From: Octopus sinensis
Taxonomy: Eukaryota
Length of the DNA stretch: 46,951 bases
Assembly (NCBI RefSeq): GCF_006345805.1
Contig: NW_021834668.1
Location: 1 to 46,951 of the forward strand
Direction: 5' to 3'
Part shown: positions 12,651 to 46,951 of the stretch, piece after piece
How positions within the stretch are numbered: position 1 is the first letter of the stretch
Layout of the letters: every line of letters starts with the position of its first letter
Program-made: the position numbers and the translations under genes
Notes under the pieces: model-generated
What the model was told of the DNA's origin: nothing
What the model saw: the letters and a program-made list of their open reading frames with translations, nothing else
The model's database searches: none

Positions 12651-12908
12651 TATAATATATGTATGTATGTATGTATGCATACACACACACGCACACATAC
12701 AAACATATCAATTGAATAAAGTTTGATTCTCTTTAATTAGCACTTTGGGGAATATCTTCCACAGAAAAGCTATGACATTGGAAACGATATATTTTAGAGA
12801 ACAATCTTATTATTTTCTGTGTTTGTGTGATGGAATGAGGTTTGATCGGATGTTCGTTGATTAGCTGATTATGTGTACGTCCGTGTATACGTGTGCTTGT
12901 ATTTGTAC

Positions 12909-12911
<3 letters not shown>

Positions 12912-13005
<94 letters not shown>
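12912..13005. repeat. Pure (TG)~47 microsatellite
   Basis: Direct reading. Confidence 0.95.
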
Positions 13006-13006
<1 letters not shown>

Positions 13007-18550: not shown

Positions 18551-18961
18551 GGATCTTTTCGGTGTCATATGAAATTGTCATCCATAATTATGACCCTAGT
18601 ATCGATCTATTGCATTTCAATCTCTTTTAGGGTTAGGGTTAGTTAGGGTTAGGGTTAGGGGTGGGGACAAGGGTATCTTTTTTTTCGTCAGAAATGTAAA
18701 TAAACCCAATCTGTTTCTTAAACGAGGGACATATTCATACGGCACAGAATGTTTTCAACACAATAGTCGTCATTGTTTGGTTGAAATTGCAGAAATTGAA
18801 GGAAAAAAAACAACGAATATCTTACAAACTATAGAATTTTCTCAATAAAGCCAAGAGAAAAAGACGTTTTATAAACACATTCTACCAGTATACGAAGTTT
18901 TGAAGGGTTTAGTTACGTGGAAATTATTTTTAAAAAACTGCCGTTCAAACAGAAAAGATCC
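18551..18961 (-). mobile_element. Second, inverted copy of the MITE, with a 23 bp deletion in one TIR and (TTAGGG)n at 18627-18660
   Basis: Reverse complement of 17705-18135 along its length. Confidence 0.8.
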
Positions 18962-19489: not shown

Positions 19490-19625
19490 TTAAGGTGGAG
19501 AGCTGGCAGAATGATTAGCACGCCGGGCAAAATGCTTAGCGGCATTTCGTCTGTTCAAATTCAGCCGAGATCGATTTTACTTTTCATCCTTTTGTGGTGG
19601 ATAAAACAAGTACCATTTGAGCACA
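19490..19625 (+). mobile_element. Degenerate SINE family B
   Basis: AAGGTGGAGAGCTGGCAGAATGATTAGCACGCCGGGCAAAATGCTTAGCGGCATTTCG. Confidence 0.7.
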
Positions 19626-20090: not shown

Positions 20091-20189
20091 TGTTACAGGA
20101 CTAGAAATGTCAGTAATAGAAGGTCCTAAAGGTTGTTGCTTTATCATCACGATGAATCTTGACCCTGTTTACAGCTCGTACTCAAACTC

Positions 20190-22197
20190 AGAAGTTGACA
20201 GTCAGTGGTCTTAGACTCCGGGCACAATCTGTAGGGATAACCCCATCGTCTTACGATGATACGGAGCAAATAGAGGCGGGTGAGGAGTGGCAAGACCATC
20301 GCGTGGGCAAGGGGCGAAATTTTTTCCCACTAGAATTCCGGACACCAAAGTTGACAGTCATTGGTCTTAGTCTCCGGCACAATCTGTAGGGAAAACTCCA
20401 TCGTCTTACGATGATATGGAGCAAATAGAGGCTGGTGAGGAGTGGCAAGACCATCGCGTGGGCAAGGGGCGAAATTCTTTTCCCACTAGAGTTCCGGACC
20501 CCAAAGTTGACAGTCAGTGGTCTTAGTCTCCGGGCACAATCTGTCGGGATAACCCCATCGTCTAACGATGATATGGAGCAAATAGAGGCTGGTGAGGAGT
20601 GGCAAGACCATCGCGTGGTTAAGGGGCGAAATTTGTTTTCCACAAAAGTTCCGGACCCCAAAGTTGAGAGTCAGTGGTCTTAGTCTCCGGGCACAATCTG
20701 TAGGGATAACCCCATCGTCTTACGATGATATGGAGCAAATAGAAGATGGTGAGGAGTGGCAAGACCATCGCGTCGCCAAGGGGCAAAATTTTTTTCGCAC
20801 TAGAGTTCCAGACCCCAAAGTTGACAGTCAGTGGTCTTCGTCTCCGGGCACAATCTGTAGGGATAACCCCATCGTCTTACGATGATATGGAGAAAATAGA
20901 GGCTGGAGAGGAGTGGCAAGACCATCGCGTGGGCAAGGGGCGAAATTTTTTTCCCACTAGAGTGCCGGAGCCCAAAAATGACAGTCAGTGGTCTTAGTCT
21001 CCGGGCACAATCTGTAGGGCTAACCCCATCGTCTAACGAAGATATGGAGCAAATAGAGGCTGCTGAAGAGTGGCATGACCATCGCGTGGGCAAGGGGCGA
21101 AATTTTTTGCCCACTAGATTTCCGGACCCCAAAGTTGACAGTCAGTGATCTTAATCTCCGGGCACAGTCTGTAGGGCTAACCCCATCGTCTTATGATGAT
21201 ATGGAGCAAATAGAGGCTGGTGAGGTGTGGCAAGACCATCGCGTGGGCAATGTCCAAAATTTTGTTCCCACTAGAGTTCCGGACCCCAAATTTGACAGTC
21301 AGTGGTCTTAGTCTCCGGACAAAATCTGTAGGGATAACCCCATCGTCTTACGATGATATGGAGCAAATAGAGGCTAGTGAGGAGTGGCAAGACCATCGCG
21401 TAGGCAAGGAACGAAATTTTTTCCCACTAGAGTTCCGGACCCCAAATTTGACAGTCAGTGGTCTTAGTCTCCGGGCACAATCTGTAGGGATAACCCCATC
21501 GTCTTACGATGATATGGAGCAAATAGAGGCTAGTGAGGAGTGGCAAGACCATCGCGTGGGCAAGGTGTGAAATTTTATCCCACGAGAGTTCCGGACCCCA
21601 AAATTTGACAGTCAGTGGTTTTAGTCTCCGGGCACAATCTGTAGGGATAACCCCATCGTCTTACGATGATATGGAGTAAATAGAGGCTGCTGAGGCGTGG
21701 CAAGACCATCGCGTGGGCAAGGGGCGAAATTTTTTCCCACTAGAGTTCCGGACCCCAAAGTTGACAGTCAGTGGTCTTATACTCCGGTTACAATCTGTAG
21801 GGATAACCCCATCGTCTTACGATGAAATGGAGCAAATAGAGGCTAGTGAGCAGTGGCAAGACCATCGCGTGGGAAAAGGGCGATATTTTTTCCCACTAGA
21901 GTTTCGGACCCCAAAGTTAACAGTCAGTGTTCTTAGTCTCCGGGCACAATCTGTAGGGCTAACCCCATCGATTTATGATGATATGGAGCAAATAGAGGCT
22001 GGTGAGGTGTGGCAAGACCATCGCGTGGGCAAGGGGCGAAACTTTTTTCCCACTATAGTTCCGGATCCCAAATTTGACAGTCAGTGGTCTTAAACTCCGG
22101 ACACAATATGTAGGGATAACCCCATCGTCTTACGATGATATGGAGCAAATAGACGCTAGTGAGGAGTGGCAAGACCATCGCGTGGGCAAGGGGCAAA
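20190..22197 (+). repeat. Satellite DNA, ~156-157 bp monomer, forward block 1 (~13 monomers)
   Basis: Consensus by eye: CCACTAGAGTTCCGGACCCCAAAGTTGACAGTCAGTGGTCTTAGTCTCCGGGCACAATCTGTAGGGATAACCCCATCGTCTTACGATGATATGGAGCAAATAGAGGCTGGTGAGGAGTGGCAAGACCATCGCGTGGGCAAGGGGCGAAATTTTTTTC. ORF starts recur every 157 bp (20435, 20592). Confidence 0.95.
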
Positions 22198-25167
22198 AAC
22201 ATTTCGTCCCTTGCCCACGCGATGATCTTCCCAATCCTCACTAGCCTCTATTTGCTCCATATCATGTAAAACGATGGGGTTATTCCTACAGATTGTAACC
22301 GGAGAATAAGACCACTGACTGTCAACTTTGGGGTCCGGAACTCTGGTGGGAAAAAAATTTCGGCCCTTGCCCACGCGATGGTCTTGCCACTCTTCACTAG
22401 CGTCTATTTGCTCCATATCATCGTAAGACGATGGGGTCATCCCTACATATTGTGTCCGGAGTCTAAGACCACTGACTGTCAACTTTGGGGTCCGAAACTC
22501 TAGTGGGAAAAAAATTTCGCCCCTTGCCCACGCGATGGTCATGCCATTCCTCACCAGCCTCTATTTGGTCCATATCTTCGTAAGACGATGGGGTTATCCC
22601 TATAGATTGTGTCCGGAGACTAAGACCACTGACTGTCAACTTTGGGGTCCAGAACTTTAGTGGGAAAAAAATTTCGCCCCTTGCGCAGTCGATGGTCTTG
22701 CCACTCCTCACTAGCCTCTATTTGCTCCATATCATCATAAGACGTTGGGGTTATTCATACAGATTGTGACCGGAGAATAAGACCACTGACTGTCAAATTT
22801 GGGGTCCGGAACTCCAGCGGGAAAAAAATTTTGCCCGTTGCCCACGCGATGGTCATGCCACTCCTTACCAGCCTCTATTTGCTCCATATCTTGGTCAAAC
22901 GATGGGGTTATCCCTACAGATTGTGTCCGGAGACAAAGAACACTGACTGTTAAATTTGGGGTCCGAAACCCTTGTGGGAAAAAATTTCGCCCTTTGCCCA
23001 CGCGATGGTCTTGCCACACCTCACCAGCCTCTATTTGCTCCATTTCATCGTAAGACGATGGGGTTATCCTTACAGATTGTAACCGGAGAATAAGACAACT
23101 GACTGTCAACTTTGGGGTCCGGAACTCTAGTGTGAAAAAATTTCGCCCCTTGCCCACGCGATGGTCTTGCCAATCCTCACTAGCCTCTATCTGCTCCATA
23201 TCATCGTAAGACGATGGGGTTATCCCTACAGATTTTGCCCGGAGACTAAAACCACTGACTGTCAAATTTTGGGGTCCGGGATTCTAGTGGGAAAAAAGTT
23301 TTGCCCCTTGCCCACGCGATGGTCTTGCCCCTCCTCACTAGCCTCTATTTGATCCATATCATCGTAAGACGATGGGGTTATCCCTACAGATTGTGCCCGG
23401 AGACTAAGATCACTGACTGTCAACTTCGGGGTCCGGAACTCTAGTGGGAAAAAATTTCGCCCCTTGCCCGCGCGATGGTCTTGCCACTGCTCACCAGCCT
23501 CTATTTGATCCATATCATCGTAAGGCGATGGGGTTATTCCTACAGATTGTGACAGGAGACTAAGACCACTGACTGTCATCTTTGGGGTCCGGAACTCTAG
23601 TGGGAAAAAATTTCGCCCCTTGCCCACGCGATGGTTTTTCCACTCCTCACTAGACTCTATTTGCTCCATATCATCGTAAGACGATGGGGTTATCCCTACA
23701 GATTGGGTCCGGAGACTAACACCACTGACTGTCAACTTTGGGGTCCGGAACTCTAGTGGGAAAAAATTTTCGCCCCTTGCCCAGTAGATGGTCATGCCAT
23801 TCCTCACCAGCCTCTATTTGCTCCATATTTTCGTAAGACGATTGGGTTATCCCTCTAGAAAGTGTCCGGAGACTAAGACCAATGACTGTCAATTTTGTGG
23901 TCCGGAACTCTAGTGGCAAAAAAATGTCGCCCCTTGCCCACGCGATGGTCTTGCCACTCACTCATCACCAGCCTCCATTTGCTCCATATCATCGTAAGAC
24001 GATGGGGTTATCCCTACAGATTGTGCCCGGAGACTAAATCCACTGACTGTCAAATTTCGGGGATGGGAACTCTAGTGGGAAAAAAATTTCGGCCCTTGCC
24101 CACGCGATGGTCTTGCCACTCCTAACTAGCGTCTATTTACTCCATATCATCGTAAGACGATGGGGTCATCCCTACATATTGTGTCCAGAGTCTAAGACCA
24201 CTGACTGTCAACTTTGGGGTCCGGAACTCTAGTGGGAAAAAAGTTTCGCATCTTGCCCACGCGATGGTCTTGGCACACCTCACCAGCCTCTATTTGCTCC
24301 ATATTATCATAAGATGATGGGGTTAGCCCTACAGATTGTGCCCGGAGACTAAGAACACTGACTGTTCATTTGGGGTCCGAAACTCTAGTGGGAAAAAATT
24401 TTCGCCCTTTGCCCACGCGATGGTCTTGACACACCTCAAAAGCCTCTATTTGCTCCATTTCATCGTAAGACGATGGGGTTATCCCTACAGATTGTTCCCG
24501 GAGACTAAGACCACTGACTGTCAACTTTGGGGTCCGGAACTCTAGTGCGAAAAAAATTTCGCCCGTTGCCCACGCGATGGTCATGCCACTCCTCACCAGC
24601 CTCTATTTGCTCCATATCTTTGTAAGACGATGGGGTTATGCCTACAGATTGTGTCCGGAGACTAAGCCCACTGACTGTCAACTTTGGGGTCCGGAACTCT
24701 AGTGGGAAAAAATTTCACCCCTTGTCCACGCGATGGTCTTGCCACTCCTCACCAGCCTCTATTTGCTCCATATCATCGTAAGACGATGGGGTTATCCCTA
24801 CAGATTGTGCCCGGAGACTAAAACCACTGACTGTCAAATTTTGGGGTCCGCAACTCTAGTGGGAAAAAAGTTTCGCCCCTTGCCCACGCGATGGTCTTGC
24901 CACTCCTCACTAGCTTCTATTTGCTCCATATCATCGTAAGACGATTGGGTTATCCCGACAGATTGTGCCCGGAGACTAAGACCACTGACTGTCAACTTTG
25001 GGGTCCGGAACTCTAGTGGGAAAAAAATCTCGCCCGTTGCCCAAGCGATGGTCATGCAACATCTCACCAGCCTCTATTTGCTCCATATCATCATAAGACG
25101 ATGGGGTTAGCCCTACAGATTGTGCCCGGAGACTAAGACCACTGTCAGCTTTGGGGTCCGGAACTCT
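22198..25167 (-). repeat. Same satellite, inverted block (~2.97 kb, ~19 monomers)
   Basis: Monomers read as reverse complement between the junctions at about 22,198-22,201 and 25,167/25,168. Confidence 0.95.
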
Positions 25168-28100
25168 AGAGTTCCGGTCCCCGAAATTTGACAGTCAGTG
25201 ACTTTAGTCTCCGGGCACAATCTGTAGGGATAACCACTTCGTCTTACGATGATATGGAGGCTGGTGATGAGTGAGTGGCAAGACCATCGCGTGGGCAAAT
25301 GGCGAAATTTTTTTCCCACTAGATTTCCGGACCCCAAAGTTGACAGTCAGTGGTCTTAGTCTCCAGACCCAATCTGTAGGGATAACGCCATCTCTTACGA
25401 TAATATGGAGCAAATAGAGGCTAGTGAGGAGTGGCAAGACCATCGCGTGGGCAAGGGGCGAAATTTTTTTCCCACTAGAGTTCGGACATCAAAGTTGACA
25501 GTCAGTGGTCTTAGACTCCTGACACAATCTGTAGGAATAACCCCATCGTCTTACGATTATATGGAGCAAATAGAGGCTGGTGAGGAGTGGCAAGGGGCGA
25601 AATTTTTTCCCACTAGAGTTCCGGACCCCAAAGTTGACAGTCAGTGATCTTAGTCTCCGGGCACAATCTGTAGGGATAACCCCATCGTCTTACGATGAAA
25701 TGGAGCAAATAGAGGCTAGTGAGGAGGGGCAAGACCATCGCGTGGGCAAGGGACTAAATTTTTTTCCCACTAGAGTTCCGGAGCCCAAAATTTGACAGTC
25801 AGTGGTTTTCGTCTCCGGGCACAATCTGTAGGGATAACCCCATCGTCTTACGATGATATGGAGCAAATAGAGGCTAGTGAGGAGTGGCAAGACCATCGCG
25901 TGGGCAAGGGGCGAAATTTTTTCCCACTAGAGTTCCGGACCCCAAAGTTGACAGTCAGTGGTCTTATTCTCCGGTTACAATCTGAAGGGATAACCCCATC
26001 GTCTTACGATGAAATGGAGCAACTAGAGGCTTGTGAGGTGTGGCAAGACCATCGCGTGGGCAAAGGGCGAAATTTTTTCCCACTACAGTTTCGGACCCCA
26101 AAGTTAACAGTCAGTGTTCTTAGTCTCCGGACACAATCTGTAGGGATAACCCCATCGTCTTACCAAGATATGGAGCAAATAGAGGCTGGTAAGGAGTGGC
26201 ATGACCATCGCGTGGGCAACGGGCAAAATTTTTTTCCCACTAGAGTTCCGGACCCCAAAGTTGACAGTCAGTGGTCCTATTCTCCGGTCACAATCTGTAT
26301 GAATAACACCATCGTCTTCCGATGTTATGGAGCAAATAGAGGCTGGTGAGGAGTGGCAAGACCATCGCGAGGGCAAGGGGCGAAATTGTTTTCCCACTAG
26401 AGTTCCGGACCCCAAAGTTGACAGTCATTGGTCTTAGTCTCCGGGCACAATCTGTAGGGCTAACCCCATCGTCTTATGATGATATAGAGCAAATAGAGGC
26501 TGGTGAGGTGTGGCATGACCATCGAGGGGGCAACGGGCGAAATGTTTTACCACTAGAGTTCCGGACCCCAAAGCTGACAGTCAGTGGTCTTAGTCTCCGG
26601 GCACAATCTGTAGGGATAACCCCATCGTCTTACGATGATAAGGAGCAAATAGAGGCTGGTGAAGAGTGGCAAGACCATCGCGTGGGCAAGGGGCGAAATT
26701 TTTTTCCCACTTGAGTTCCGGACCCCAAATTTGACAGTCAGTGGTCTTCGTCTCCGGGAAGAATCTGTAGGGCTAACCTCATCGTCTTATGATGATAAGG
26801 AGCAAATAGGGGCTAGTGTGGAGTGGCAAAACCACCGCGTGGGCAAGGGGCCAAATTTTTTTCCCACTAGAGTTCCGGACCCCAAAATTTGAGAGTCAGT
26901 GGTTTTAGTCTCCGGGCACATTCTGTAGGGATAACCCCATCGTCTTACGATGTTATGGAGCAAATAGAGGATGGTGAGGAGTGGCAAGACCATCGCGTGG
27001 GCAAGTGGCGAAATTTTTTTTCCACTAGAGTTCCGGACCCCAAATTTGACAGTCAGTGGTCTTAGTCTCCGGACACAATCTATAGGGATAACCCCATCGT
27101 CTTACGAAGATATGGAGCAAATAGAGGCTGGTGAGGAATGGCATGACCATCGCGTGGGCAATGGGCGAAATTTTTTTCGCACTATGGTTCCGGACCGCAA
27201 TGTTGACAGTGAGTGGTCTTAGTCTCCGGACCCTATCTATAGGGATAACCCCATTGTCTTCCGATGATATGGAGCAAATAGAGGCTAGTGAGGAGTGGCA
27301 AGACCATCGCGTGGGCAAGGGGCGAAATTTTTTCCCACAAGAGATCCGGACCCCAATGTTGACAGTCAGTGATCTTAGTCTCCGGTCACAATCCGTAGGA
27401 ATAACCCCATCGTCTTCCGATGATATGGAGCAAATAGAGGCTGGTGAGGAGTGGCAAGACCATCGCGTGGGCAAGGGGTGAAATTTTTTTCCCACTAGAG
27501 TTCCGGACCCCAAATTTGACAGACAGTGGTTTAGTCTCCGGTCACACTCTGTAGGATTAACCCCATCGTCTTACGATGATATGGAGAAAATAGAGGCTTT
27601 GGAGGAGTGGCAAGACCATCGCGTGGGCAAGTGGCAAAATTATTTTTCCACTGGAGTTACGGACCCCAAAGTTGATATTCAGTGGTCTTAGTCTCCGGAC
27701 ACAATCTATAGGGATAACCCCATCGTCTTACGAAGATATGGAGCAAATAGAGGGTGGTGAGGAATGGCATGGCCATCGCGTGGCAAGGGGTGAAATTTTT
27801 TTCCCACTAAAGTTCCGGACCCCAAAGTTGACAGTCAGTGGTTTTAGTGTCCGGGCACAATCTGTAGGGATAACCACATCGTCTTACGATGATATGGAGC
27901 AAATAGAGGCTAGTGAGGAGTGGCAAGACTATCGCGTGGGCAAGGGGCGAAACTTTTTTCCCACTAGAGTTCCGGACCCCAAAGTTAACAGTCAGTGGTC
28001 TTACTCTCCGGACACAATCTGTAGGGATAACCCCCCATCGTCTTACCAACATATGGAGCAAATAGAGGCTGGTGAGGAGTGGCATGAACGTCGCGTGGGC

Positions 28101-31100
28101 AACGGGCGAAATTTTTTTCGCACTAGAGTTCCGGACCCCAAAGTTGACAGTCAGTTGTCTTAGTCTCCGGGCACAATCTGTAGGGATAACCCCATCGTCT
28201 TACAATGATATGGAGCAAATAGAGGCTAGTGAAAGTGGGAAGACCATCGCGTGGGCAAGGGGCAAAACTTTTTTCCCACTAGAGTTCCGGACCCCAAAGT
28301 TGACAGTCATTGGTCTTAGTCTCCGGGCACAATCTGTAGGGCTAATCCCATCGTCTTATGATGATATGGAGCAAATAGAGGCTGGTGAGGTGTGGCAAGA
28401 CCATCGCGTGGTTAAAGGGCGAAATTTTTTCCCACTAGAGTTCCGGACGCCAAAGTTGACAGTCAGTGGTCTTATTCTCCGGTCACAATCTGTAGGGATA
28501 ACCCCATCGTCTTACGATGATATGGAGCAAATAGAGGCTGGTGAGGAGTGGCATGAACATCGCGTGGGCAAGAAGCGAAATTTTTTTCCACAGGAGTGAT
28601 CCGGACCCCGAAGTTGACAGTCAGTGTTCTTAGTCTCCGGGCACAATCTGTAGGGCTAACCCCATCGTCTTATGATGATATGGAGCAAATAGAGGCTGGT
28701 GAGGAGTGGCAAGACCATCGCGTGGGCAAGGAGCGAAACTTTTTTCCCACTATAGTTCCGGACCCCAAATTTGACAGTCAGTGGTCTTAGACTCCGGACA
28801 CAATATGTAGGGTTAACCCCATCGTCTTACGATGATATGGAGCAAATAGACGCTAGTGAGGAGTGGCAAGACCATCGCGTGGGCAAGGGTCGAAAATTTT
28901 TTGCACTAGAGTTCCGGACCCAAAAGTTGACAGTCAGTGGTCTTATACTCCGGTTACAATCTGTAGGAATAACCCCATCGTTTTACGATGATATGGAGCA
29001 AATAGAGGCTAGTGAGGAGTGGGAAGACCATCGCGTGGGCAAGGGACGAAATTTTTTTCCGTCTAGAGTTCCCGACCCCGAAATTTGACAGTCAGTGGTT
29101 TTAGTCTCCGTGCACAATCTGTAGGAATAACCCCATCGTCTTACAATGATATGGAGCAAATGGAGGCTGGTGATGAGTGACTGGCAAGACCATCGCGTGG
29201 GCAAGGGGCAAAACTTTTTTCCCACTAGAGTTCCGGATCCCAAAGTTGACAGTCAGTGGTCTTATTCTCCGGTTACAATCTGTAGGAATAACCCCATCGT
29301 TTTACGATGATATGGAGCAAATTGAGGCTAGTGAGGAGTGGGAAGACCATCGCGTGGGCAAGGGACGAAATTTTTTTCCGTCTAGAGTTACCGACCCCGA
29401 AATTTGACAGTCAGTGGTTTTAGTCTCCGGGCACAATCTGTAGGGTTAACCCAATCGTCTTACGATGATATGGAGCAAATGGTGGCTGGTGATGAGTGAG
29501 TGGCAAGACCATCGCATGGGCAAGGTGCGAAATTTTTTTGCCACTAGAGTTCCGGACCCCAAAGTTGACAGTCAGTGGTCTTAGTCTCCGGACCCAATCT
29601 GTAGGGATAACCCCATCGTCTTTCGAAGATATGGATCAAAAAGAGGCTGGTGAGGAATGGCATGACAATCGCGTGGGCAAGGGGCGACATTTTTTTCCCA
29701 CTAGAGTTCCGGACCCCAAATTTGACAGTCAGTGATCTTAGTCTCCGGGCACAATCTGTAGGGATAACCCCATCGTCTTACGATGATATGGAGAAAATAG
29801 TGGCTAGTGAGGAGTGGCAAGACCATCGCGTGGGCAAGGAGCGAAATCTTTCTTCCCACTAGACTTCCGGACCCCAAAGTTGAGAGACAGTGGTCTCAGT
29901 CTCCGGGCACAATCTGTAGGGCTAACCCCATCGTCTTATGATGATATGGAGCAAATAGAGGCTGGTGAAGTGTGTCAAGATCATCGCGTGTTTAAGGGGC
30001 GAAATTTTTTTGTCACTAGAGTTCCGGACCACAAATTTGACAGTCAGTGATCTTAGTCTCCGGACACAATCTGAAGGGATAACCCCATCGTCTAACCAAG
30101 ATATGGAGCAAATAGAGGCTGGTGAGGAGTGGCATGACCATCACGTGGGCAATGGGCGAAATTTTTTTCCGACTAGAGTTTCGGACCCCAAAGTTGACAG
30201 TCAGTGGTCTTATTCTCCGGTCACAATCTGTATGAATACCCACATCGTCTTACGATGATATGGAGCAAATAGAGGCTGGTGAGGAGTGGCAAGACCATCG
30301 CGCGGGAATGGGGCGAAATTTTTTCGCACTAAAATTCCCGACCCCAAAGTTGACAGTCAGTGGTCTTAGTCTCCGGACACAATCTATAGGGATAACCCAT
30401 CGTCTTACGAAGATATGGGGCAAATAGAGGCTGGTGAGGAATGGCATGACCATCGCGTGGGCAAGGAGCGAAATTTTTTCGCACTAGAGTTCCGGACACC
30501 AAAGTTGACAGTCAGTGGTCTTAGACTCCGGACCCAATCTGTAGGGATAACCCCATCGTCTTACGATGATATGGAGCAAATACAGGCTAGTGAGGAGTGG
30601 CAAGACCATCGCGTGGGCAAGGGGCGAAATTTTTTTCCCACTAGAGTTCCGGACCCCAAAGTTGAGAGTCAGTGGTCTTAGTCTCCGGTCACAATCTGTA
30701 GGAATAACCCCATCGTCTTACGATGATATAGAGCAAATAGAGGCTGGTGAGGAGTGGCAAGACCATCGCGCGGGCAAGATGTGAAATTTTTTCCCACTAG
30801 AATTCCGGACCCCGAAGTTGACAGTCAGTGTTCTTAGTCTCCGGGCACGATCTGTAGGGCTAACCCCATCGTCTTATGATGATGTGTAGCAAATAGAGGC
30901 TGGTGAGGTGTGGCAAGACCATCGCGTGGGCAAGGGGCGAAACTTTTTTCCCACTATTGTTCCGGACCCCAAAGTTGACAGTCAGTGGTCTTAGTCTCCG
31001 GACACAATATGTAGGGATAACCCCATCGTCTTACGATGATATTGAGCAAATAGACGCTAGTGAGGAGTGGCAAGACCATCGCGTGGGCAAGGGGCGAAAT

Positions 31101-34100
31101 TTTTTCGCACTAGAGTTCCGGACCCCAAAGTTGACAGTCAGTGGTCTTATTCTCCGGTTACAATCTGTAGGAATAACACCATCGTTTCACGATGATATGG
31201 CTCAAATTGAGGCTAGTGAGGAGTGGGAAGACCATCGCGTGGGCAAGGGACGAAATTTTTTTCCCAGTAGAGTTCCGGACCCCGAAATTTGACAGTCAGT
31301 GGTTTTAGTCTCCGGGCACAATCATTAGGGATAACCCCATCGTCTTACAATGATATGGAGCAAATGGAGGCTGTTGATGAGTTAGTGGCAAGACCATCGC
31401 GTGGGCAAGGGGCGATATTTTTTTGCCACTAGAGTTCCGGACCCCAAAGTTAACAGTCAGTGGTCTTAGTCTCCGGACACAATCTATAGGGATAACCCCA
31501 TCGCCTTACGAAGATATGGAGCAAATAGAGACTGGTGAGGAATGGCATGACCATCGCGTGGGCAAGGAGCGAAATTTTTTGCCACTAGAGTTCCGGACCC
31601 CAATGTTGACTGTCAGTGGTCTTAGTCTCCGGGCACAATCTGTAGGGCTAACCCCATCGTCTTATGATGATATGGAGCAAATAGAGGCTGGAGAGATGTG
31701 GCATGACCATCGCGTGGGCAACGGGCGAAAATTTTTCGCGCTAGAATTCAGGACCCCAAAGTTGACAGTCAGTGGTCTTAGTCTCCAGGCACAATCTGTA
31801 GGGATAACCCCATCATCTTACGATGATATGGAGCAAATAGAGGCTAGTGAGGAGTGGCAAGACCATCGCGTGGGCAAGGGGCGAAACTTTTTTCCCACTA
31901 GATTTCTGGACCCCAAAATTTGACAGTCAGTGGTCTTAGACTCCGGGCACACTCTGTAGAGATAACCCCATCGTCTTACGATAATATGGAGCAGATAGAG
32001 GCTAGTGAGGAGTGGCAAGACCATTGCGTATGCAAGGGTCGACATTTTTTCCCACTTGAGTTCCGGACCCCAAAGTTGACAGTCAGTGGTCTTATTCTCC
32101 GGTTACAATCTGTAGGGATAACCCCATCGTCTTACGATGAAATGGAGCAAATAGAGGCTTGTGTGGTGTGTCAAGACCAACGCGTGGGCAAAGGGCGTAA
32201 TTTTTTCCCACTAGAGTTCCGGACCCCAAAGTTGACTGCCAGTGGTCTTAGACTCTGGACACAATATGTAGGGATGACCCCATCTTCTTACGATGATATG
32301 GAGCAAATAGACGCTAGAGAAATGTGGCAAGACCATCGCGTGGGCAAGGTGCGAAATTTTTTTCGCACTAGAGTTCCGGACCCCAAATTTGACAGTCAGT
32401 GGTTTTATTCACCGGTTACAATCTGTAGGAATAACCCCATCTTTTAACGATGATATGGAGCAAATAGAGGCTAGTGAGGAGTGGGAAGAACATCGCGTGG
32501 GAAGGGGACGAAATTTTTTTCCCACTAGAGTTCCGAAACCCCAAATTTGACAGTCAGTGGTTTTAGTCTCCGGGCACAATCAGTAGGGATAACCCCATCG
32601 TCTTACGATGATATGGAGCAAATTGAGGCTGGTGATGAGTGAGTGGCAAGACCATCGCGTGGGCAAGGGGCGACATATTTTTCCCACTAGAGTTCCGGAC
32701 CACAAAGTTAACAGTCAGTGGTCTTAGTCTCCGGACACAATCTATAGGGATAACCCAATCGCCTTACGAAGATATGGAGCAAACAGAGACTGGTGAGGAA
32801 TGGCATGACCATCGCGTGGGCAAGGAGCGAAATTTTTTTCCCAGTAGAGTTCCGGACCCCAATGTTGACAGTCAGTGGTCTTAGTCTCCGGTCACAATCT
32901 GTAGGAATAACCCCATCGTCTTACGATGATATGGAGCAAATAGAGGCTGGTGAGGAGTGGCAAGATCATCGAACGGGCAAGGGGCGAAATTTTTTTCCCA
33001 CTAGAGTTCCGGACCCCAAATTTGACATTCAGTGGACTTAGTCTCCGGACACAATCTGTAGGGATAACTCCATCGTCTTACGAAGATATGGAGCAAATAG
33101 AGGCTGGTGAGGAGTGGCATGACCATCGCGTGCGCAAGAGGCGAAATTTTTTTCCCACTAGAGTTCCGGAGCCCTAAGTTGACAGTCAGTGATCTTAGGC
33201 TCCGGCACAATCTGTAGGGATAACTCCATCGTCTTACAATGATATGGAGCAAATAGAGGCTAGTGAGGAGTGGCATGACCATCGCGTGCAAATGGCGAAA
33301 TTTGTTTCCCACTAGAGTTCCGGACCCCAAGATGACAGTCAGTGGTCTTAGACTCCGGCACAATCTGTTGGGCTAACCCCATCGTCTTATGATGATATGG
33401 AGCAAATAGAGGCTGGTGAGGTGTGGCAAGACCATCGCGTGGTTAAGGGGCGAAATTTATTTCCCACTAGAGTTCCGGACCCCAATGTTGACAGTCAGTG
33501 GTCTTAGTCTCCGGTCACAATCTGTAGGAATAACCCCATCGTCTTACGATGATATGGAGCAAATAGAGGCTGGTGAGGAGTGGCAATATCATCGCGCGGG
33601 CAAGGGGCGAAATTTTTTTCCCACTAGAGTTCCGGACCCCGAAGATGACAGTCAGTGGTCTTAGTCTCCGGGCACAATCTGTAGGATAACCCCATCGTCT
33701 TATGATGATGTGAAGCAAATAGAGGCTGCTGAAGTGTGGCAAGACCATCGCGTGGTGAACGGGCGAAATATTTTTTCCACTAGAGTTCCGGACCCCAAAG
33801 TTGACAGTCAGTGGTCTTAGTCTCCGGACACAATCTGTAGGGATAACCCCATCGTCTTACCAAGATATGGACCAAATAGAGGATGGGGAGGAGTGGCATG
33901 ACCATCGCGTGGGCAAGAGGCGAAATTTTTTTCCCACTAGAGTTCTGGACCCCAAATTTGACAGTCAGTGGTCTTAGTCTCCGGACACAATCTGTAGGGA
34001 TAACTCCATCGTCTTATGATGATATGGAGCAAATAGAGGCTGGTGAGGTGTGGCAACCATCGCGTGGGCAAGGGGCGAAATTTTTTTCCCACTAGAGTTC

Positions 34101-37100
34101 CGGACCCCAAATTTGACATTCAGTGGTCTTAGTCTCCGGACACAATCTGTAGGGATAACTCCATCGTCTTACGAAGATATGGAGCAAATAGAGGCTGGTG
34201 AGGAGTTGCATGACCATCGCGTGCGCAAGAGGCGAAATTTTTTCGCACTAGAGTTCCGGAGCCTAAGTTGACAGTCAATGGTCTTAGGCTCCGGGCACAA
34301 TCTGTAGGGATAACCCCATCGTCTTACGATGATATGGAGCAAATAGAGGCTAGTGACGAGTGGCAAGACCATCGCGTGTGCAAATGGCGAAAATTGTTTC
34401 CCACTAGAGTTCCGGACCCCAAAGATGACAGTCAGTGGTCTTAGACTCCGGCACAATCTGTTGGGCTAACCCCATCGTCTTATGATGATACGGAGCAAAT
34501 AGAGGCTGGTGAGGTGTGGCAAGACCATCGCGTGGTTAAGGGGCGAAATTTATTTCCCACTAGAGTTCCGGACCCCAATTTGACAGTCAGTGGTCTTCGT
34601 CTCCGGGCAGAATCTGTAGGGCTAACCTCATCGTCTTATGATGATATGGAGCAAATAGAGGCTAGTGAGGAGTGGCAAAACCATCGCGTGGGCAAGGGGA
34701 AATTTTTTCCCACTAGAGTTCCGGACACCAAATTGACAGTCAGTGGTTTTAGTCTCCGGGCACAATCTGTAGGGATAACCCCATCGTCTTACGATGTAAT
34801 GGAGCAAATAGAGGCTGGTGAGGAGTGGCAAGACCATCGCGTGGGCAAGGGGCGAAATTTTTTCCCATTAGAGTTTCGGACCCAAAGTTGACAGTCAGTG
34901 GTCTTAGTCTTCGGACCCTATCTATAGGGATAACCCCATTGTCTCCGATGATATGGAGCAAATAGAGGCTAGTGAGGAGTGAAAAGACCATCGCGTGGGC
35001 AAGGGGCGAAATTTTTTCCCACAAGAGTTCCGGACCCCAATGTTGACAATCAGTGGTCTTAGTCTCCGGTCACAATCTGTAGGAATAACCCAATCGTCTT
35101 ACGATGATATGGAGCAAATAGAGGCTTGTGAGGAGAGGCAAGACCATCGCGTGGGCAAGGGGCGAAACTTTTTTCCCACTAGAGTTCCGAACCCCAAATT
35201 TGACAGTCAGTGGTTTTAGTCTCCGGGCACAATCTGTAAAGATAACCCCATCGTCTTACGATGATATGGAGCAAATAGAGGCTGGTGAGGAGTGGCAAGA
35301 CCATCGCGTGGGCTAGGGGCGCATTTTTTCCCACTAGAGTTACGGACCCCAAAGTTGACAGTCAGTGGTCTTAGGCTCCGGACAAAATCTGTAGGGATAA
35401 TCCATTCGTCTTACCAAGATATGGAGCAAATAGAGGCTTGTGGGGAGTGGCATGACCGTCGCGTGGGCAACGGGCGAAATTTTTTCACACTAGAGTTCCG
35501 GACCCCAAATTTGACAGTCAGTGGTCTTAGTCTCCGGGCACAATCTGTAGGGATAACCCCATCGTCTTACAATGATATGGAGCAAAAAGAGGTTAGTGAG
35601 GAATGGCAAGACCATCGCGTGGGCAAGGGGCAAACCTTTTTTCCCACTAGAGCTCCGACCCCAAAATTTGACAGTCAGCGATTTTAGTCTCCGGGCACAA
35701 TCTGTAGGGATAACCCCATCGTCTAACGATGATATGGATCAAATAGAGGCTGGTGAGGAGTGGCAAGACCATCGCGTGGGCAAGTGGCGAAATTTTTTTG
35801 CCACTGGAGTTCCGGACCCCAAAGTTGACATTCAGTGGTCTTAGTCTCCGGGCGCAATCCGTGGGGCTAACCCCATCGTCTTATTATGATATGGAGCAAA
35901 TAGAGGCTGGTGAGGTGTGGCAAGACCATCGCGTGGTTAAGGGGCGAAATTTATTTCCCACTAGAGTTCCGGACCCCAATGTTGACAGTCAGTGGTCTTA
36001 GTCTCCGGTCACAATCTGTAGGAATAACCCCATCGTCTTACGATGATATGGAGCAAATAGAGGCTGGTGAGGAGTGGCAAGATCATCGCGCGGGCAAGGG
36101 GCGAAATTTTTTTCCCACTAGAGTTCCGGACCCCGAAGTTGACAGTCAGTGGTCTTAGTCTCCGGGCACAATCTGTAGGGATAACCCCATCGTCTTATGA
36201 TGATGTGAAGCAAATAGAGGCTGCTGAAGTGTGGCAAGACCATCGCGTGGTGAACGGGCGAAATATTTTTACCACTAGAGTTCCGGACCCCAAAGTTGAC
36301 AGTCAGTGGTCTTAGTCTCCGGACACAATCTGTAGGGATAACCCCATCGTCTTACCAAGATATGGACCAAATAGAGGATGGGGAGGAGTGGCATGACCAT
36401 CGCGTGGGCAAGAGGCGAAATTTTTTTCCCACTAGAGTTCTGGACCCCAAATTTGACAGTCAGTGGTCTTAGTCTCCGGACACAATCTGTAGGGATAACT
36501 CCATCGTCTTATGATGATATGGAGCAAATAGAGGCTGGTGAGGTGTGGCATGACCATCGCGTGGGCAAGGGGCGAAATTTTTTTCCCACTAGAGTTCTGG
36601 ACCCCAAATTTGACAGTCAGTGGTCTTAGTCTCCGGACACAATCTGTAGGGATAACTCCATCGTCTTACGAAGATATGGAGCAAATAGAGGCTGGTGAGG
36701 AGTTGCATGACCATCGCGTGCGCAAGAGGCGAAATTTTTTTCCCACTAGAGTTCCGGAGCCCTAAGTTGACAGTCAATGGTCTTAGGCTCCGGGCACAAT
36801 CTGTAGGGATAACCCCATCGTCTTACGATGATATGGAGCAAATAGAGGCTAGTGACGAGTGGCAAGACCATCGCGTGTGCAAATGGCGAAAATTGTTTCC
36901 CACTAGAGTTCCGGACCCCAAAGATGACAGTCAGTGGTCTTAGACTCCGGGCACAATCTGTTGGGCTAACCCCATCGTCTTATGATGATACGGAGCAAAT
37001 AGAGGCTGGTGAGGTGTGGCAAGACCATCGCGTGGTTAAGGGGCGAAATTTATTTCCCACTAGAGTTCCGGACCCCAAATTTGACAGTCAGTGGTCTTCG

Positions 37101-40100
37101 TCTCCGGGCAGAATCTGTAGGGCTAACCTCATCGTCTTATGATGATATGGAGCAAATAGAGGCTAGTGAGGAGTGGCAAAACCATCGCGTGGGCAAGGGG
37201 CGAAATTTTTTCCCACTAGAGTTCCGGACACCAAAATTTGACAGTCAGTGGTTTTAGTCTCCGGGCACAATCTGTAGGGATAACCCCATCGTCTTACGAT
37301 GTAATGGAGCAAATAGAGGCTGGTGAGGAGTGGCAAGACCATCGCGTGGGCAAGGGGCGAAAATTTTTTCCCATTAGAGTTTCGGACCCCAAAGTTGACA
37401 GTCAGTGGTCTTAGTCTTCGGACCCTATCTATAGGGAAAACCCCAACGTCTTATGATGATATGGACCAAATTACAGGCTGGTGAGGTGTGACAAGACCAT
37501 CGCGTCATTAAGGGGCGAAATTTTATTGCCACTAGAGTTCCGGACACCAAATTTTAGTCAGTGGTCTTAGTCTCCGGACACAATCTGTTGGGATAACCCC
37601 ATCGTCTTACCAAGATATGGAGCAAATAGAGGCTGGTCATGTGTGGCATGACCATCGCTTGGGCAACGGGCCAAATTTTTTCCCACTAGAGTTCCGGACC
37701 CCAAAGTTGACAGTCAGTGGTCTTTTTCTCCGGTCACAATCTGTATGAATAACCCCATCGTCTTACGATGATATGGAGCAAATAGAGGCTGGTGAGGTGT
37801 AGCAAGACCATCGCGTGGGCAAGGGGCGAAATTTTTTTGGCGCTAATGTTCCGGATCCCAAAGTTGACAGTCAGTGGTTTTAGTCTCCGGGTACAATCTG
37901 TAGGGCTAACCCCATCGTCTTATGATGATATAGAGCAAATAGAGGCTGGTGAGGTGTGGCAAGACCATCGCATGGGCAAGGGGCGAAATTTTTCCCACTA
38001 GAGTTCCGGACCGCAAAGTTCAGAGTCAATGGTCTTCGTCTCTGGGCACAATCTGTAGGGCTAACCTCATCGTCTTATGATGATATGGAGCAAATTGAGG
38101 CTAGTGAGGAGTGGCATGACCATCGCGTGGGCAAGGGGACAAATTTTTTCCACTACAGTTCCGGACCCCAAAGTTGACAGTCAGTGGTCTTAGTCTCCGG
38201 GCACAATCTGTAGGGATAACCCATCGTCGTCTTACGATATGGAGCAAGTAGAGGCTAGTTAGGAGTGGTAAGACCATCGCGTGGGCAAGGAGCGAAATTT
38301 TTTTCCCACTAGAGTTCCGGACCCCAAAGTTGAGAGTCAGTGGTCTCTGTCTCCTGGCACAATCTGTAGGGATAACCCCATCGTCTTACCAAGATATGGA
38401 GCAAATAGAGGCTAGTGAGGTGTGGCATTACCATCGCGTGGGCAACGGGCGAAATTTTTTTCCCACTAGAGTTCCGGACCCCAAATTTGACAGTCAGTGG
38501 TCTATGTCTCCGGGCACAATCTGTAGGGATAACCCCATCGTCTTACGATGATATGGAGCAAATAGAGGCTGGTGAGGTGTGGCAAGACAATCGCGTGGGC
38601 AAGGGGCGAAATTTTTTTCCCACTAGAGTTCCGGACCCCAAATTTGACAGTCAGTGGTCTTAGTTTTCGGACACAATCTGTAGGGATAACTCCATCGTCT
38701 TACGAAGATATGGAGCAGATAGAGGCTGGTGAGGAGGGCATGACCATCGCGTGGGCAAGAGGCGAAATTTTTTTCCCACTAGAGTTCTGGAGCCCTAAGT
38801 TAACAGTCAGTGGTCTTAGGCTCCGGGCACAATCTGTAGGGATAACCCCATCGTCTTACGATGATATGGAGCAAATAGAGGCTAGTAAGGAGTGGCAAGA
38901 CCATCGCGTGGGCAAGGGGCGAAATTTTTTTCGCACTAGAGTTCCGGACCCCAAAGTTGACAGTCAGTGGTCTTAGTCTCCGGGCACAATCTGTAGGGCT
39001 AACCCCATCGTCTTATGATGATAGGGAGCAAATAGAGGCTGGTGAGGTGTGGCAAGACCATCGCGTGTTTAAAGGGCGTAATTTTTTTCCCACTAGAGTT
39101 CCGGACCCCAAAGTTGACAGTCAGTGATTTTAGTCTCCGGGCACAATCTGTAGGGCTAACCCCATCGTCTTATGATGATATGGAGCAAATAGAGGCAGGT
39201 GAGGTGTGGCAAGACCATCGCGTGGGCAAGGTGCGAAATTTTTTTCCCACTAGAGTTCCGGACCCCAAATTTGACAGTCAGTGTCTTAGTCTCCGGCACA
39301 ATCTGTAGGGATAATCCCATCGTCTTATGATGATATGGAGCAAATAGAGGCTGGTGAGTGTGGCAAGACCATCGCGTGGGCAAGGGGCAAAATTTTTTTC
39401 CGACTAGAGTTCCGGACCCCAAAGTTGACATTCAGTGGTCTTAGTCTCCGGGCACAATCTGTGGGGCTAACCCCATCGTCTTATGATGATATGGAGCAAA
39501 TAGAGGCTGGTGAGGTGTGGCAAGACCATCACTTGGGCAAGGGGCGAAATTTTTTTCGCACTAGAGTTCCATACCCCAAATTTGACAGTCAGTGGTCTTA
39601 GTCTCCGGGCACAATCTGTAGGGATAACCCCATCGTCTTACGATGATATGGAGCAAGTAGAGGCTAGTTAGGAGTGGTAAGACCATCGCGTGGGCAAGGA
39701 GCGAAATTTTTTTCCCACTAGAGTTCCGGACCCCAAAGTTGACAGTCAGTGGTCTCTGTCTCCTGGCACAATCTGTAGGGATAACCCCATCGTCTTACCA
39801 AGATATGGAGCAAATAGAGGCTAGTGAGGTGTGGCATTACCATCGCGTGGGCAACGGGCGAAATTTTTTCCCACTAGAGTTCCGGACCCCAAATTTGACA
39901 GTCAGTGGTCTATGTCTCCGGGCACAATCTGTAGGGATAACCCCATCGTCTTACGATGATATGGAGCAAATAGAGGCTGGTGAGGTGTGGCAAGACAATC
40001 GCGTGGGCAAGGAAGAAATTTTTTTCCCACTAGAGTTCCGGACCCCAAATTTGACATTCAGTGGTCTTAGTCTCCGGGCACAATCTGTGGGGCTAACCCC

Positions 40101-46100: not shown

Positions 46101-46951
46101 TAGGGGCGAAATTTTTTTCCCACTAAAGTGCTGGACCACAAAGTTGACAGTCACTGTTCTTATTCCCCGGACACAGTCTCTAGGGATAACCCCATCGTCT
46201 TACCAAGATATGGAGCAAATAGAGGCTAGTGAGGAGTGGCAAGACCATCGCGTGGGCAAGTGGCGAAATTTTTTTCCCACTAGTGTTCCGGACCCCAAAT
46301 TGGACAGTCAGTGGTCTTATTCTCCGGTCACAATCTGTAGGGATAACCCCCATCTTCTTACGATGATATGGAGCAAATAGAGGCTTGTGAGGAGTGGCAA
46401 GTCTATCGCGTGGGTAAGAGGCGAAATTTTTTCCCACTAGAGTTCCGGAGCACTAAATTGACAGTCAGTGGTCTTAGGCTCCGGGCACAATCTGTAGGGA
46501 TAACCCCATCGTCTTACGATGATATGGAGCAAATAGAGGCTAGTGAGGAGTGGCAAGACCATCGCGTGGGGAAGGGGCGAAATTTTTTTCCCACTAGAGT
46601 TCCGGACCCCAAAGTTGACAGTCAGTGGTCTTAGTCTCCGGGCACAATCTGTAGGGCTAACCCCATCGTCTTATGATGATATGGAGCAAATAGAGGCTGG
46701 TGAGGTGTGGCAAGGCCATCGCGTGGGCAAGGGCGAAATTTTTTTCCCTCTAGAGTTCCGGACCCCAAAGTTGACAGTCAGTCGTCTTAGTCTTCGGGCA
46801 CAATCTGTAGGGATAACACCATCGTCTTACCAAGATATGGAGCAAATAGAGGATGGTGAGGAGTGGCAAGACCATCGCGTGGGCAAGGGCGAAATTTTTT
46901 CGCACTAGAGTTCCGGACCCCAAAGTTGACAGTCAGTGGTCTATGTCTCCG
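25168..46951 (+). repeat. Same satellite, forward block 2 (~139 monomers), continuing past the window end, with higher-order repeats
   Basis: Uninterrupted tandem monomers with recurring diagnostic variants. Confidence 0.97.

What the first reader, a model, noticed from the sequence alone, without database searches (positions are those of the whole stretch)
22040..25300. ~19-monomer inversion inside the satellite array, with two palindromic junctions and variant order that supports a true inversion
Seen: the left junction ...CGCGTGGGCAAGGGGCAAAAAC|ATTTCGTCCCTTGCCCACGCG... (about 22,198-22,201) is a foldback at the A/T tract. The right junction is a spacerless perfect 20 bp palindrome, CCGGAACTCT|AGAGTTCCGG (25158-25177), centred on the monomer's CTAG. 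Both breaks fall in the same ~12 bp window of the monomer (GAAATTTTTTCCCACTAG), which is lost at both ends. Elsewhere three diagnostic variants run in order: X (AGACGCTAG, CAATATG), Y (TTATTCTCCGGTTAC, GGGAAGAC, GGGACG) and Z (GGTGATGAGTGAGTGG), at about 28,790-29,200, 30,990-31,400 and 32,260-32,650. Here X-Y lie at the left end of the inverted block (22,500 down to 22,200) and Z lies immediately right of the right junction, as expected for a reciprocal inversion and not for a mirror-image foldback. Inference: a microhomology or template-switch inversion at a fragile site in the monomer, creating kb-scale cruciform-capable junctions.
Basis: partly seen in the sequence, partly recalled or inferred. 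Interest (0 to 1): 0.75.

Follow-up and report, generated by a model that had tools for sequence, protein, structure and literature searches.

The report
Flipped block inside a satellite array
Nineteen units (3 kb) of a 157-bp tandem repeat lie back-to-front inside a 27-kb array, joined at two tiny palindromes of the repeat unit; this is a real-looking but ordinary rearrangement, and one sequence cannot tell whether it was a simple flip or an inverted copy.

Summary
A 157-bp satellite runs from 20186 to the window end. Monomers M001-M013 are on the + strand, M014-M032 (22202-25167, 19 monomers) on the - strand, and M033-M172 on the + strand. The right junction is a perfect 20-bp palindrome (25158-25177) centred on the monomer's CTAG. 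The left junction (22199-22201) is tail-to-tail in the A3T7 tract.

Neither junction is a mirror foldback. Monomers facing each other across a junction are only as alike as random pairs. The block has no copy in the window better than 89.7% identical, so it is not a flipped duplicate or a foldback chimera.

An X monomer also sits just left of the left junction, and an X-Z pair lies inside the block. The two flanks joined (X|Z) therefore look as "ancestral" as the re-inverted Y|Z joint (p about 0.03 each).

A balanced two-break inversion (0.42) and an inverted duplication of the flanks at one stalled fork (0.35) both fit. CTAG and AAATTT are two of only six short palindromes in the monomer, which accounts for the matching phase on both sides of each junction. 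A fragile site is not required and not excluded.

No other array of this satellite could be found. This is a known kind of event and the interest is low to moderate.

The parts
20186..22198 (+). Left part of the 157-bp satellite array: 13 monomers, M001-M013. M011-M013 are types U, a and X. The array starts here after unique and (GA)n-rich sequence.
   Evidence: TRF; nhmmer map; monomer types from shared rare variants; array edge read.
22194..22201 (.). Left, tail-to-tail junction inside the A3T7 tract: GGGGC-AAAAACA-TTTCGTCCC. The breakpoint is ambiguous. M013 ends at consensus position 144-149 and M014 at 148-155. The two arms are symmetric up to position 148 and are separated by 3 nt (ACA).
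   Evidence: Single-strand fold of 22125-22274: -66.2 kcal/mol, z = -19.4.
22202..25167 (-). Inverted block of 19 monomers, M014-M032 (2,966 bp). Read in its own sense the order is m74-like, m, m, m, U, a, X, Z, W, m, m, m, m, U, T, V, W, X, Y.
   Evidence: 19 nhmmer hits on the minus strand at 151-184 bits. blastn of the block against the rest of the window gives 244 HSPs, all minus strand, best full-length identity 89.7%. Types.
25158..25177 (.). Right, head-to-head junction: a perfect 20-bp palindrome with no spacer, centred on one shared CTAG (25166-25169, monomer positions 3-6).
   Evidence: Fold of 25093-25242: -60.2 kcal/mol, z = -14.8, against -11.5 for ordinary array.
25168..46951 (+). 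Right part of the array: 140 monomers, M033-M172, running off the window end. M033 is a Z-type monomer. M034-M039 are the closest relatives, in inverted orientation, of M023-M018.
25144..25595 (.). Cluster of microhomology-flanked deletions around the right junction. There is a 4-bp deletion in M032 (about 25145, CAGT/CAGT), a 9-bp deletion in M033 (25259|25260, GAG..GAG) and a 17-bp deletion in M035 (about 25594|25595, GGCAAG..GGCAAG). The last two are the only deletions of 9 bp or more in 171 monomers.
   Evidence: The block counterparts M025 and M022 lack these deletions.
23918..24234 (-). The internal X->Z adjacency, M026 then M025 in the block's own sense. It mirrors the two flanks M013(X) and M033(Z). 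M025 and M033 alone share the variant T at column 15.

Best explanation
A real 2.97-kb stretch of 19 monomers of a 157-bp satellite lies in reverse orientation inside a head-to-tail array.

Shown: two non-homologous inverted joins create it. One is tail-to-tail in the A3T7/AAATTT tract. The other is head-to-head, exactly on CTAG. AAATTT and CTAG are neighbouring self-complementary motifs of the monomer.

Inferred: when two ends of a direct array are joined in inverted orientation, their 3' tails have the same sense. They can pair only at an inverted microhomology, and at a palindromic motif both sides then end in the same monomer phase.

The history I rank first is a balanced two-break inversion of an array that already carried long-range duplications of 7 and about 12 monomers. 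The ends were rejoined by end joining or microhomology. About 4-19 bp were lost per break, and possibly three monomers (Y, Z, W) at the left break. The result is two imperfect spacerless palindromes. They can form hairpins as single strands and may since have collected small deletions near the right centre.
For: - Orientation map and junction anatomy.
- No mirror symmetry. Facing monomer pairs are 0.84-0.94 identical and share no more rare variants than random pairs do; the background is 0.896 +/- 0.027.
- The block is not a copy of anything in the window: identity is at most 89.7% over 3 kb, and all hits are on the minus strand.
- Re-inversion restores X-Y|Z. The M014'->M033 joint matches four other Y->Z adjacencies, p = 0.026. 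Real adjacencies reach that score in 32% of cases and random pairs in 3%.
- After re-inversion, the closest relatives become direct neighbours, as expected in a satellite. These are M012~M027, M025~M033 (exclusive T15), and M018/19/21~M039/38/36, which are reciprocal best matches.
- The junction centres sit on CTAG, and within the A/T tract at the centre of AAATTT. These are two of only six palindromes of 4 bp or more in the consensus.
- There is no foreign DNA at either junction.
Against: - The second re-inverted joint, M013->M032', has no support (p = 0.5). It is colinear with M069-M081 only if three monomers are skipped.
- The flanks joined without the block (X|Z) are supported as well as Y|Z is (p = 0.03).
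- Two independent random breaks falling in the same 13-bp interval is unlikely (about 0.007), unless that interval is break-prone or the choice of motif is flexible.
- The deletions next to the right junction fit error-prone copying better than plain end joining.
- The gapped colinearity test has no power here. Fake joints score as high as real ones.
- No reads, no second haplotype and no other array could be examined.
Confidence: 0.42

Rival explanations
1. Inverted duplication of the flanks made by replication template switching, the 'dupINVdup' or paired-duplication pattern A | B' A' | B. In this model one fork stalled or broke in the TTTTTTTCCCACTAG window between M013(X) and M033(Z). The nascent strand jumped about 12 monomers ahead onto the opposite strand at an A/T tract. 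It then copied back across the intact X-Z boundary for 19 monomers and returned at CTAG to the place it had left. Later monomer gains, losses and conversions blurred the copies to about 94% identity.
For: - One stall site explains why all four ends lie in the same 13-bp window.
- It also explains why the flanks are canonical neighbours: M013->M033 has support 15.0, p = 0.03, identical in type to M026'->M025'.
- The flanks joined are colinear with the block interior over 11 monomers with one gap: M011-13 plus M033-40 against M028-17. Sister relations are M012~M027, M025~M033 (exclusive T15) and M018-21~M039-36.
- The two largest deletions of the array, both flanked by microhomology, lie just after the proposed second switch. 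From memory, small copying errors near breakpoints are described for replicative rearrangements.
Against: - The three leftmost block monomers (W, X, Y) have no counterpart at M041-M043: identities 0.89, 0.94 and 0.84, with no shared rare variants.
- The four rightmost block monomers match M007-M010 only weakly, at ranks 3 to 90.
- M013 is subtype Xa (T6, with M056 and M070). Its supposed copy M026 is subtype Xb (G68, found only in M015, M026 and M078).
- Copy-to-source identity of 0.90-0.97 is no higher than among other long-range duplicates, so nothing marks a single joint origin.
- The Y|Z fit on re-inversion would then be a coincidence (p = 0.026).
Confidence: 0.35
2. An inverted fragment from elsewhere was inserted at a single break between X and Z. 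The source could be a linear or circular piece of the same satellite, or a foldback-type mobile element whose arms are satellite repeats.
For: - The flanks are canonical neighbours.
- The block ends joined as a circle are loosely colinear with M064-M080.
- The window holds two other foldback structures, at 7290-7904 and 17729-18935.
Against: - The block's closest relatives are the immediately adjacent flank monomers, in order. That points to a local origin.
- There are no terminal sequences, no target-site duplication and no non-satellite DNA at the junctions.
- The chain test has no power.
Confidence: 0.08
3. Assembly or library artefact: a chimeric read, an amplification template switch or a mis-oriented unitig.
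For: Satellite arrays are hard to assemble. No reads are available here. Inverted chimeras at short microhomologies are a known product of strand-displacing amplification (from memory).
Against: - The flanks are not mirror copies.
- The block differs by at least 10% from every other stretch in the window, so it is not an in-vitro copy of local sequence.
- The inverted arms are only 79-88% alike. No overlap-based misjoin could link them, so each junction must sit inside reads.
- Two chimeric joins 3 kb apart, both on palindromic motifs, with block variants that continue the local monomer-type order, are unlikely.
Confidence: 0.07
4. Mirror foldback: hairpin-capped break, breakage-fusion-bridge type inverted duplication.
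For: Both junctions sit on short palindromes, which is where foldback priming starts.
Against: Tested and not met. Monomer k to the left and monomer k to the right of each junction are at background identity, and the junction monomers are of different types (X|Y and m74-like|Z). A real mirror palindrome in the same window, 7290-7904 with outer arms 99% complementary, shows what one looks like.
Confidence: 0.01

Closest known systems
Inversions inside human alpha-satellite higher-order-repeat arrays (for example the chromosome 1 D1Z7 core inversion, polymorphic among people; PMC12822586)
   Same: A block of monomers in reverse orientation inside an otherwise head-to-tail centromeric or satellite array, arising as ordinary structural variation.
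   Different: Those inversions span 0.6-2.5 Mb within regular higher-order repeats, and I found no base-level account of their breakpoints in the passages I read. This one is 3 kb in an array without regular higher-order periodicity, in an unidentified animal genome, and its population status is unknown.
Paired-duplication inversions (dupINVdup) and other replicative template-switch rearrangements (FoSTeS/MMBIR); recalled from memory, not checked in the library
   Same: The A | B' A' | B topology, short microhomology at the joins and small extra errors close to the breakpoints.
   Different: The copies here are 3-10% diverged and partly non-colinear, and they lie inside a tandem repeat where earlier direct duplications give the same picture. 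A copy-number gain cannot be demonstrated.
Microhomology at satellite exchange breakpoints (6-bp AAAAGA at the chromosome 13/22 alpha-satellite hybrid; PMC12822586)
   Same: A join inside satellite monomers at a few shared bases.
   Different: That is a direct-orientation exchange between two arrays. This is an inverted join, which calls for an inverted (here palindromic) microhomology.
Fold-back inversions and palindromic duplications primed at short inverted repeats next to a break (from memory)
   Same: A junction centred on a 4-6 bp palindrome with no spacer.
   Different: Those give mirror-image arms. Here the arms are different monomers at background identity.
Foldback transposons whose inverted arms are built of tandem subrepeats (from memory)
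   Same: Opposed arrays of a repeat of about 155 bp.
   Different: No defined element ends, no loop, no target duplication, and three orientation domains instead of two. Not supported.

Membership tests
Balanced (two-break) inversion within a tandem array | A contiguous block of the same repeat in reverse orientation, with one head-to-head and one tail-to-tail junction | tested here: met
   13 (+), 19 (-) and 140 (+) monomers. Junctions at 22199-22201 and 25167|25168.
Balanced (two-break) inversion within a tandem array | Re-inversion restores the ancestral neighbour relations at BOTH breaks | tested here: inconclusive
   Break B (M014'->M033, Y->Z) is supported, p = 0.026. Break A (M013->M032') is not, p = 0.5, and is colinear only with a 3-monomer gap. 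The gapped test has no power.
Balanced (two-break) inversion within a tandem array | No net gain of sequence; an uninverted allele holds the same monomers | not testable with these tools
   No second haplotype, reads or related array are available. Collection scans found nothing.
Inverted duplication by template switching (dupINVdup type) | The inverted segment is a copy of the sequence on both sides of the insertion point, and the flanks are contiguous in the ancestor | tested here: inconclusive
   Flanks X|Z are supported as neighbours (p = 0.03). Eleven block monomers are colinear with the joined flanks. The 3 leftmost and 4 rightmost block monomers are not, and the X subtypes differ.
Inverted duplication by template switching (dupINVdup type) | Microhomology at both joins | tested here: inconclusive
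   Right join: 4-bp CTAG shared by both monomers. Left join: 0-5 bp (A run) depending on the parse, with 3 nt (ACA) between the symmetric arms.
Mirror foldback / breakage-fusion-bridge palindrome | The arms are mirror copies of each other outward from the junction | tested here: not met
   Facing monomers are 0.84-0.94 identical (background 0.896) and share no rare variants above background. The junction monomers are of different types.
Foldback chimeric read or flipped-duplicate assembly artefact | The inverted part is an exact or near-exact reverse complement of adjacent or other assembled sequence | tested here: not met
   Best identity of the block to any other stretch in the window is 89.7%. 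No mirror symmetry. Read support itself is not testable.
Regular higher-order repeat (HOR) array | A sharp identity peak at a fixed monomer lag | tested here: not met
   Mean identity by lag ranges from 0.892 to 0.902, with only weak bumps at lags 7-8 and 14-16. Long-range duplicates are irregular and carry monomer gains and losses.
Site-specific fragile or cleavage site in the monomer | Independent rearrangement breakpoints recur at the same monomer phase | not testable with these tools
   There is only one inverted block in 172 monomers, and no other array was retrievable. The other length changes of 9 bp or more lie at monomer positions 95 and 122, not in the A/T-CTAG window.
Foldback transposon with repeat-built arms | Defined termini, a central loop and a target-site duplication | tested here: not met
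   The junctions carry only 0-3 nt that cannot be assigned to a monomer and no non-satellite sequence. There are three orientation domains.

The most novel reading that the evidence does not exclude
The 13-bp A3T7-CTAG window of this monomer is a preferred break or stall site, for example a nucleosome linker, a fork-pausing tract or a nick site. Strand switches in this satellite would then recur genome-wide at this phase. Each new spacerless palindrome would afterwards be 'revised' by small microhomology deletions next to its centre, as seen at M032, M033 and M035. This would give a base-resolved, testable rule for how inversions arise and are tolerated inside satellite arrays.
Probability: 0.12. 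Interest if true: 0.55.

Novelty: new member of a known kind. Interest (0 to 1): 0.3.

Why it matters
Orientation switches inside satellite arrays are known, but they are rarely described base by base. This case shows both joins on neighbouring short palindromes of the monomer. It gives a simple geometric reason why an inverted join in a direct array tends to land on a self-complementary motif.

It also shows how easily a 'variant order proves a reciprocal inversion' argument can be matched by an inverted-duplication history. That matters for anyone calling inversions in complete assemblies.

The practical value is modest. The region is a candidate for checking assembly quality, and possibly a local hairpin-prone site. 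If many arrays showed the same breakpoint phase, it would become a useful model of satellite fragility.

Tried and rejected
- Searches for the satellite elsewhere. A 20-mer found no match in viral contigs or metagenome contigs. A 16-mer gave only single chance matches per contig in metagenome and prokaryote genome collections. No related array could be studied.
- Literature search by sequence strings. Neither the satellite nor the upstream SINE-like repeat gave a hit. The organism stays unidentified. From memory the SINE resembles cephalopod repeats; this is unverified.
- Rfam at gathering thresholds on 1-26000: no hit.
- Looking for other assemblies through ORFs read across the satellite. Three exact look-ups found nothing. 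A homology search with the 214-aa satellite ORF found nothing among 5.8 billion proteins.
- Gapped monomer-chain alignment across candidate ancestral joints. Rejected as evidence, because artificial joints score as high as real ones (median 99 against 92).
- Excess of private substitutions near the junctions or in the block: none. Singletons average 0.47 per monomer, and block against right array gives p = 0.26.
- Divergence of the block from the flanks: none. Mean identities are 0.889-0.906 in all comparisons.
- Mirror foldback, flipped duplicate and regular higher-order repeat: each tested and not met.
- The X-subtype argument against the inverted-duplication model was down-weighted. The 'a' monomers next to those X monomers are sisters, so mosaic conversion is common here.
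Full report
**1. What is there**

The window is eukaryotic. It is rich in microsatellites, contains a TTAGGG-type repeat and carries transposon remnants. From 20186 to the window end at 46951 it holds one array of a 157-bp satellite.

Tandem Repeats Finder splits the array into three abutting parts:
- 20192-22198, 12.8 copies;
- 22195-25169, 19.0 copies, with a consensus that is the reverse complement of the others;
- 25166-46951, 139.3 copies.

A profile built from the monomers finds 172 hits and none upstream of the array. M001-M013 are on the + strand, M014-M032 on the - strand and M033-M172 on the + strand. The consensus, phased as CACTAGAG...GGGGCGAAATTTTTTTCC, is given. Mean pairwise identity is 0.897. 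The block and the two flanks do not differ in this respect (0.889-0.906).

**2. The junctions**

*Right junction.* It is a perfect 10+10 palindrome, CCGGAACTCT|AGAGTTCCGG (25158-25177), centred at 25167|25168. M032 and M033 both start at monomer position 3 and share a single CTAG. Past the 10 bp on each side, the two arms diverge, because they are different monomers.

*Left junction.* The arms are 22135-22198 and 22202-22265 (64 nt, 91% complementary), separated by ACA. Both arms end at position 148, the centre of AAATTT.

The exact breakpoint is ambiguous. One reading is M013 to position 144 followed by M014 from position 155, with one T-to-G change. The other is M013 to position 149, with one G-to-A change, followed by M014 from position 151. 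Microhomology is therefore 0-5 bp, and the A/T tract is partly retained.

No foreign DNA is present at either junction.

As single strands, the 150 nt around each centre fold at -60.2 kcal/mol (right, z = -14.8) and -66.2 kcal/mol (left, z = -19.4). Ordinary array gives -11.5. Over longer distances the arms are only 79-88% alike, so 'kb-scale cruciform' overstates the case.

**3. Not a mirror, not a flipped duplicate**

Monomer k to the left and monomer k to the right of each junction are 0.84-0.94 identical. They share no more rare variants than random pairs do; the background is 0.896 +/- 0.027. The junction monomers are of different types: X|Y at the left and m74-like|Z at the right.

The whole block matches the rest of the window only on the minus strand, at no more than 89.7% identity.

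These results exclude three things: a hairpin or breakage-fusion-bridge palindrome, a foldback chimeric read, and an in-vitro or assembly copy of local sequence. Arms that are 12-21% different also cannot be linked by an overlap-based misjoin. A genuine mirror palindrome in the same window (7290-7904, outer arms 99% complementary) serves as an internal contrast.

**4.

Shared rare variants define clear monomer types.

| Type | Members | Defining variants |
|---|---|---|
| X | M013, 15, 26, 56, 70, 78 | 58A and 104C, exclusive to these six |
| Y | M014, 57, 59, 71, 79 | |
| Z | M025, 33, 58, 60, 72, 80 | 162-bp monomers with a GTGA insertion |
| W, U, T, a | several each | |

These types occur only in the proximal 12.5 kb of the array.

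An ungapped adjacency test gives the results below. Real neighbours reach a score of 15 or more in 32% of cases, and random pairs in 3%.

| Joint tested | What it represents | Support | Null p |
|---|---|---|---|
| M014'->M033 | re-inverted right break, Y->Z | 16.1 | 0.026 |
| M013->M032' | re-inverted left break | 7.3 | 0.5 |
| M013->M033 | flanks joined without the block, X->Z | 15.0 | 0.03 |

A gapped chain test looked impressive at first. It was discarded because artificial joints score just as high.

**5. Two histories that fit**

*(a) Balanced inversion.* After re-inversion the array reads [m m m m U a X][m m m m U a X Z W][m m m m U T V W X Y][Z m m m m U T V ...].

Closest relatives then become direct neighbours at spacings of 7 and about 12 monomers. 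They are M012~M027, M025~M033 (exclusive T15) and M018/19/21~M039/38/36, which are reciprocal best matches. This is how satellites normally look.

The costs of this history are three. The X|m74-like joint is non-canonical, or three monomers were lost there. The flanks happen to be X and Z. Two breaks fell in the same 13-bp window.

*(b) Inverted duplication of the flanks, A | B' A' | B.* One stall in that window, a jump ahead onto the other strand, copying back for 19 monomers, and a return at CTAG.

This explains the shared window, the X|Z flanks and the 11-monomer colinearity between the block interior and the joined flanks.

Its costs are four. The three leftmost and four rightmost block monomers lack counterparts. 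The X subtypes differ (Xa against Xb). The copies are no closer than other duplicates. The Y|Z fit becomes a coincidence.

I rank (a) slightly ahead, at 0.42 against 0.35. Only an uninverted allele can decide between them.

**6. Why the junctions sit where they do**

The consensus monomer has only six perfect palindromes of 4 bp or more:

| Motif | Centre (between positions) |
|---|---|
| CTAG | 4 and 5 |
| TCCGGA | 12 and 13 |
| CCGG | 48 and 49 |
| ATAT | 89 and 90 |
| CGCG | 130 and 131 |
| AAATTT | 148 and 149 |

Two ends of a direct array that are joined in inverted orientation expose 3' tails of the same sense. These can pair only at an inverted microhomology. At a palindromic motif, both sides then end in the same monomer phase, as observed. 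Non-palindromic inverted 5-7-mers also exist and would give unequal phases.

The remaining coincidence is that the two motifs used are only 13 bp apart. Its weight depends on the model:
- about 0.28 if the two motifs are picked at random;
- about 0.007 if two random breaks each use the nearest motifs;
- about 0.08 for a single break (history b).

A break-prone A/T window is therefore possible but not needed, and one event cannot show it.

**7. A scar near the right centre**

Monomer lengths are 152-159 bp (162 for Z types), with two exceptions:
- M035 is 138 bp, with a 17-bp deletion between GGCAAG repeats;
- M033 is a Z type lacking 9 bp between GAG repeats.

M032 also lacks 4 bp (CAGT/CAGT). 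The two deletions of 9 bp or more are the only ones in 171 monomers, and both lie within three monomers of the right junction. The post hoc probability is about (12/171)^2 = 0.005.

They lower arm identity in the first monomer to 79%. They could be copying errors made during a replicative event, or later deletions that make the palindrome less symmetric. There is no excess of private substitutions near the junctions.

**8. Comparison with known cases, and novelty**

Inversions inside satellite arrays are well documented. One example is the polymorphic 0.6-2.5 Mb inversion in the human chromosome 1 alpha-satellite array. Microhomology at a satellite exchange breakpoint has also been reported (PMC12822586).

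The present case is a small, base-resolved member of that kind, in an unidentified animal genome. No other copy of the satellite could be retrieved from the accessible collections or protein databases. Recurrence, polymorphism and read support therefore remain untested.

**9. Verdict**

That the event was reciprocal, that the site is fragile, and that the junctions can form kb-scale cruciforms are not established. Interest is 0.3.

Noticed in passing
window 7290-7904 (centre about 7612); also 6430-6558: A true mirror palindrome. Its core is (AAAAAAT)n abutting its own reverse complement (ATTTTTT)n. The outer arms, 7290-7423 and 7771-7904, are 99% complementary. A further copy of the arm end at 6430-6558 pairs with 7846-7974 (98%). 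It is probably a foldback or MITE-like element.
   Followed up: partly
window 17729-18935: A foldback-like element with arms of about 375 nt (86-96% complementary) around a 457-nt centre. The arms carry short telomere-type runs, (CCCTAA)n at 18002-18035 and (TTAGGG)n at 18627-18660.
   Followed up: partly
window 16406-16976 and 19490-19625: A SINE-like unit of about 236 bp, present as two tandem copies plus a partial third, with a diverged copy 2.6 kb downstream. From memory it resembles cephalopod SINEs. No Rfam hit at gathering thresholds (scan of 1-26000), and no literature match for the unit's sequence.
   Followed up: partly
window 12871-13400 and 6800-7211: Remnants of transposable elements: a Tc1/mariner-like transposase fragment broken by stops, and a short ORF that looks like the C-terminal end of a LINE protein. 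Neither was searched against databases.
   Followed up: no
window 25144-25595: The two largest deletions in the whole array (9 bp in M033, 17 bp in M035), plus a 4-bp deletion in M032, all flanked by direct microhomology, cluster within 450 bp of the right junction.
   Followed up: yes
window 20186-46951, e.g. 40838-41482: One reading frame of the monomer is free of stops. Where unit length varies by 1 bp, ORFs run through up to four monomers (214 aa). A homology search against 5.8 billion proteins found nothing, so this is most likely chance openness.
   Followed up: yes
window 20186-32700 versus 32700-46951: The diagnostic monomer types (X, Y, Z, W, U, T, a) occur only in the proximal 12.5 kb of the array. 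The distal part shows only a weak 14-16-monomer periodicity. Z-type monomers are 162 bp long because of a GTGA insertion.
   Followed up: partly
whole array: Variants private to one monomer are very rare (0.47 per monomer), although monomers differ by about 10%. Nearly all variation is shared in mosaic patterns, which suggests frequent conversion or shuffling between monomers.
   Followed up: partly
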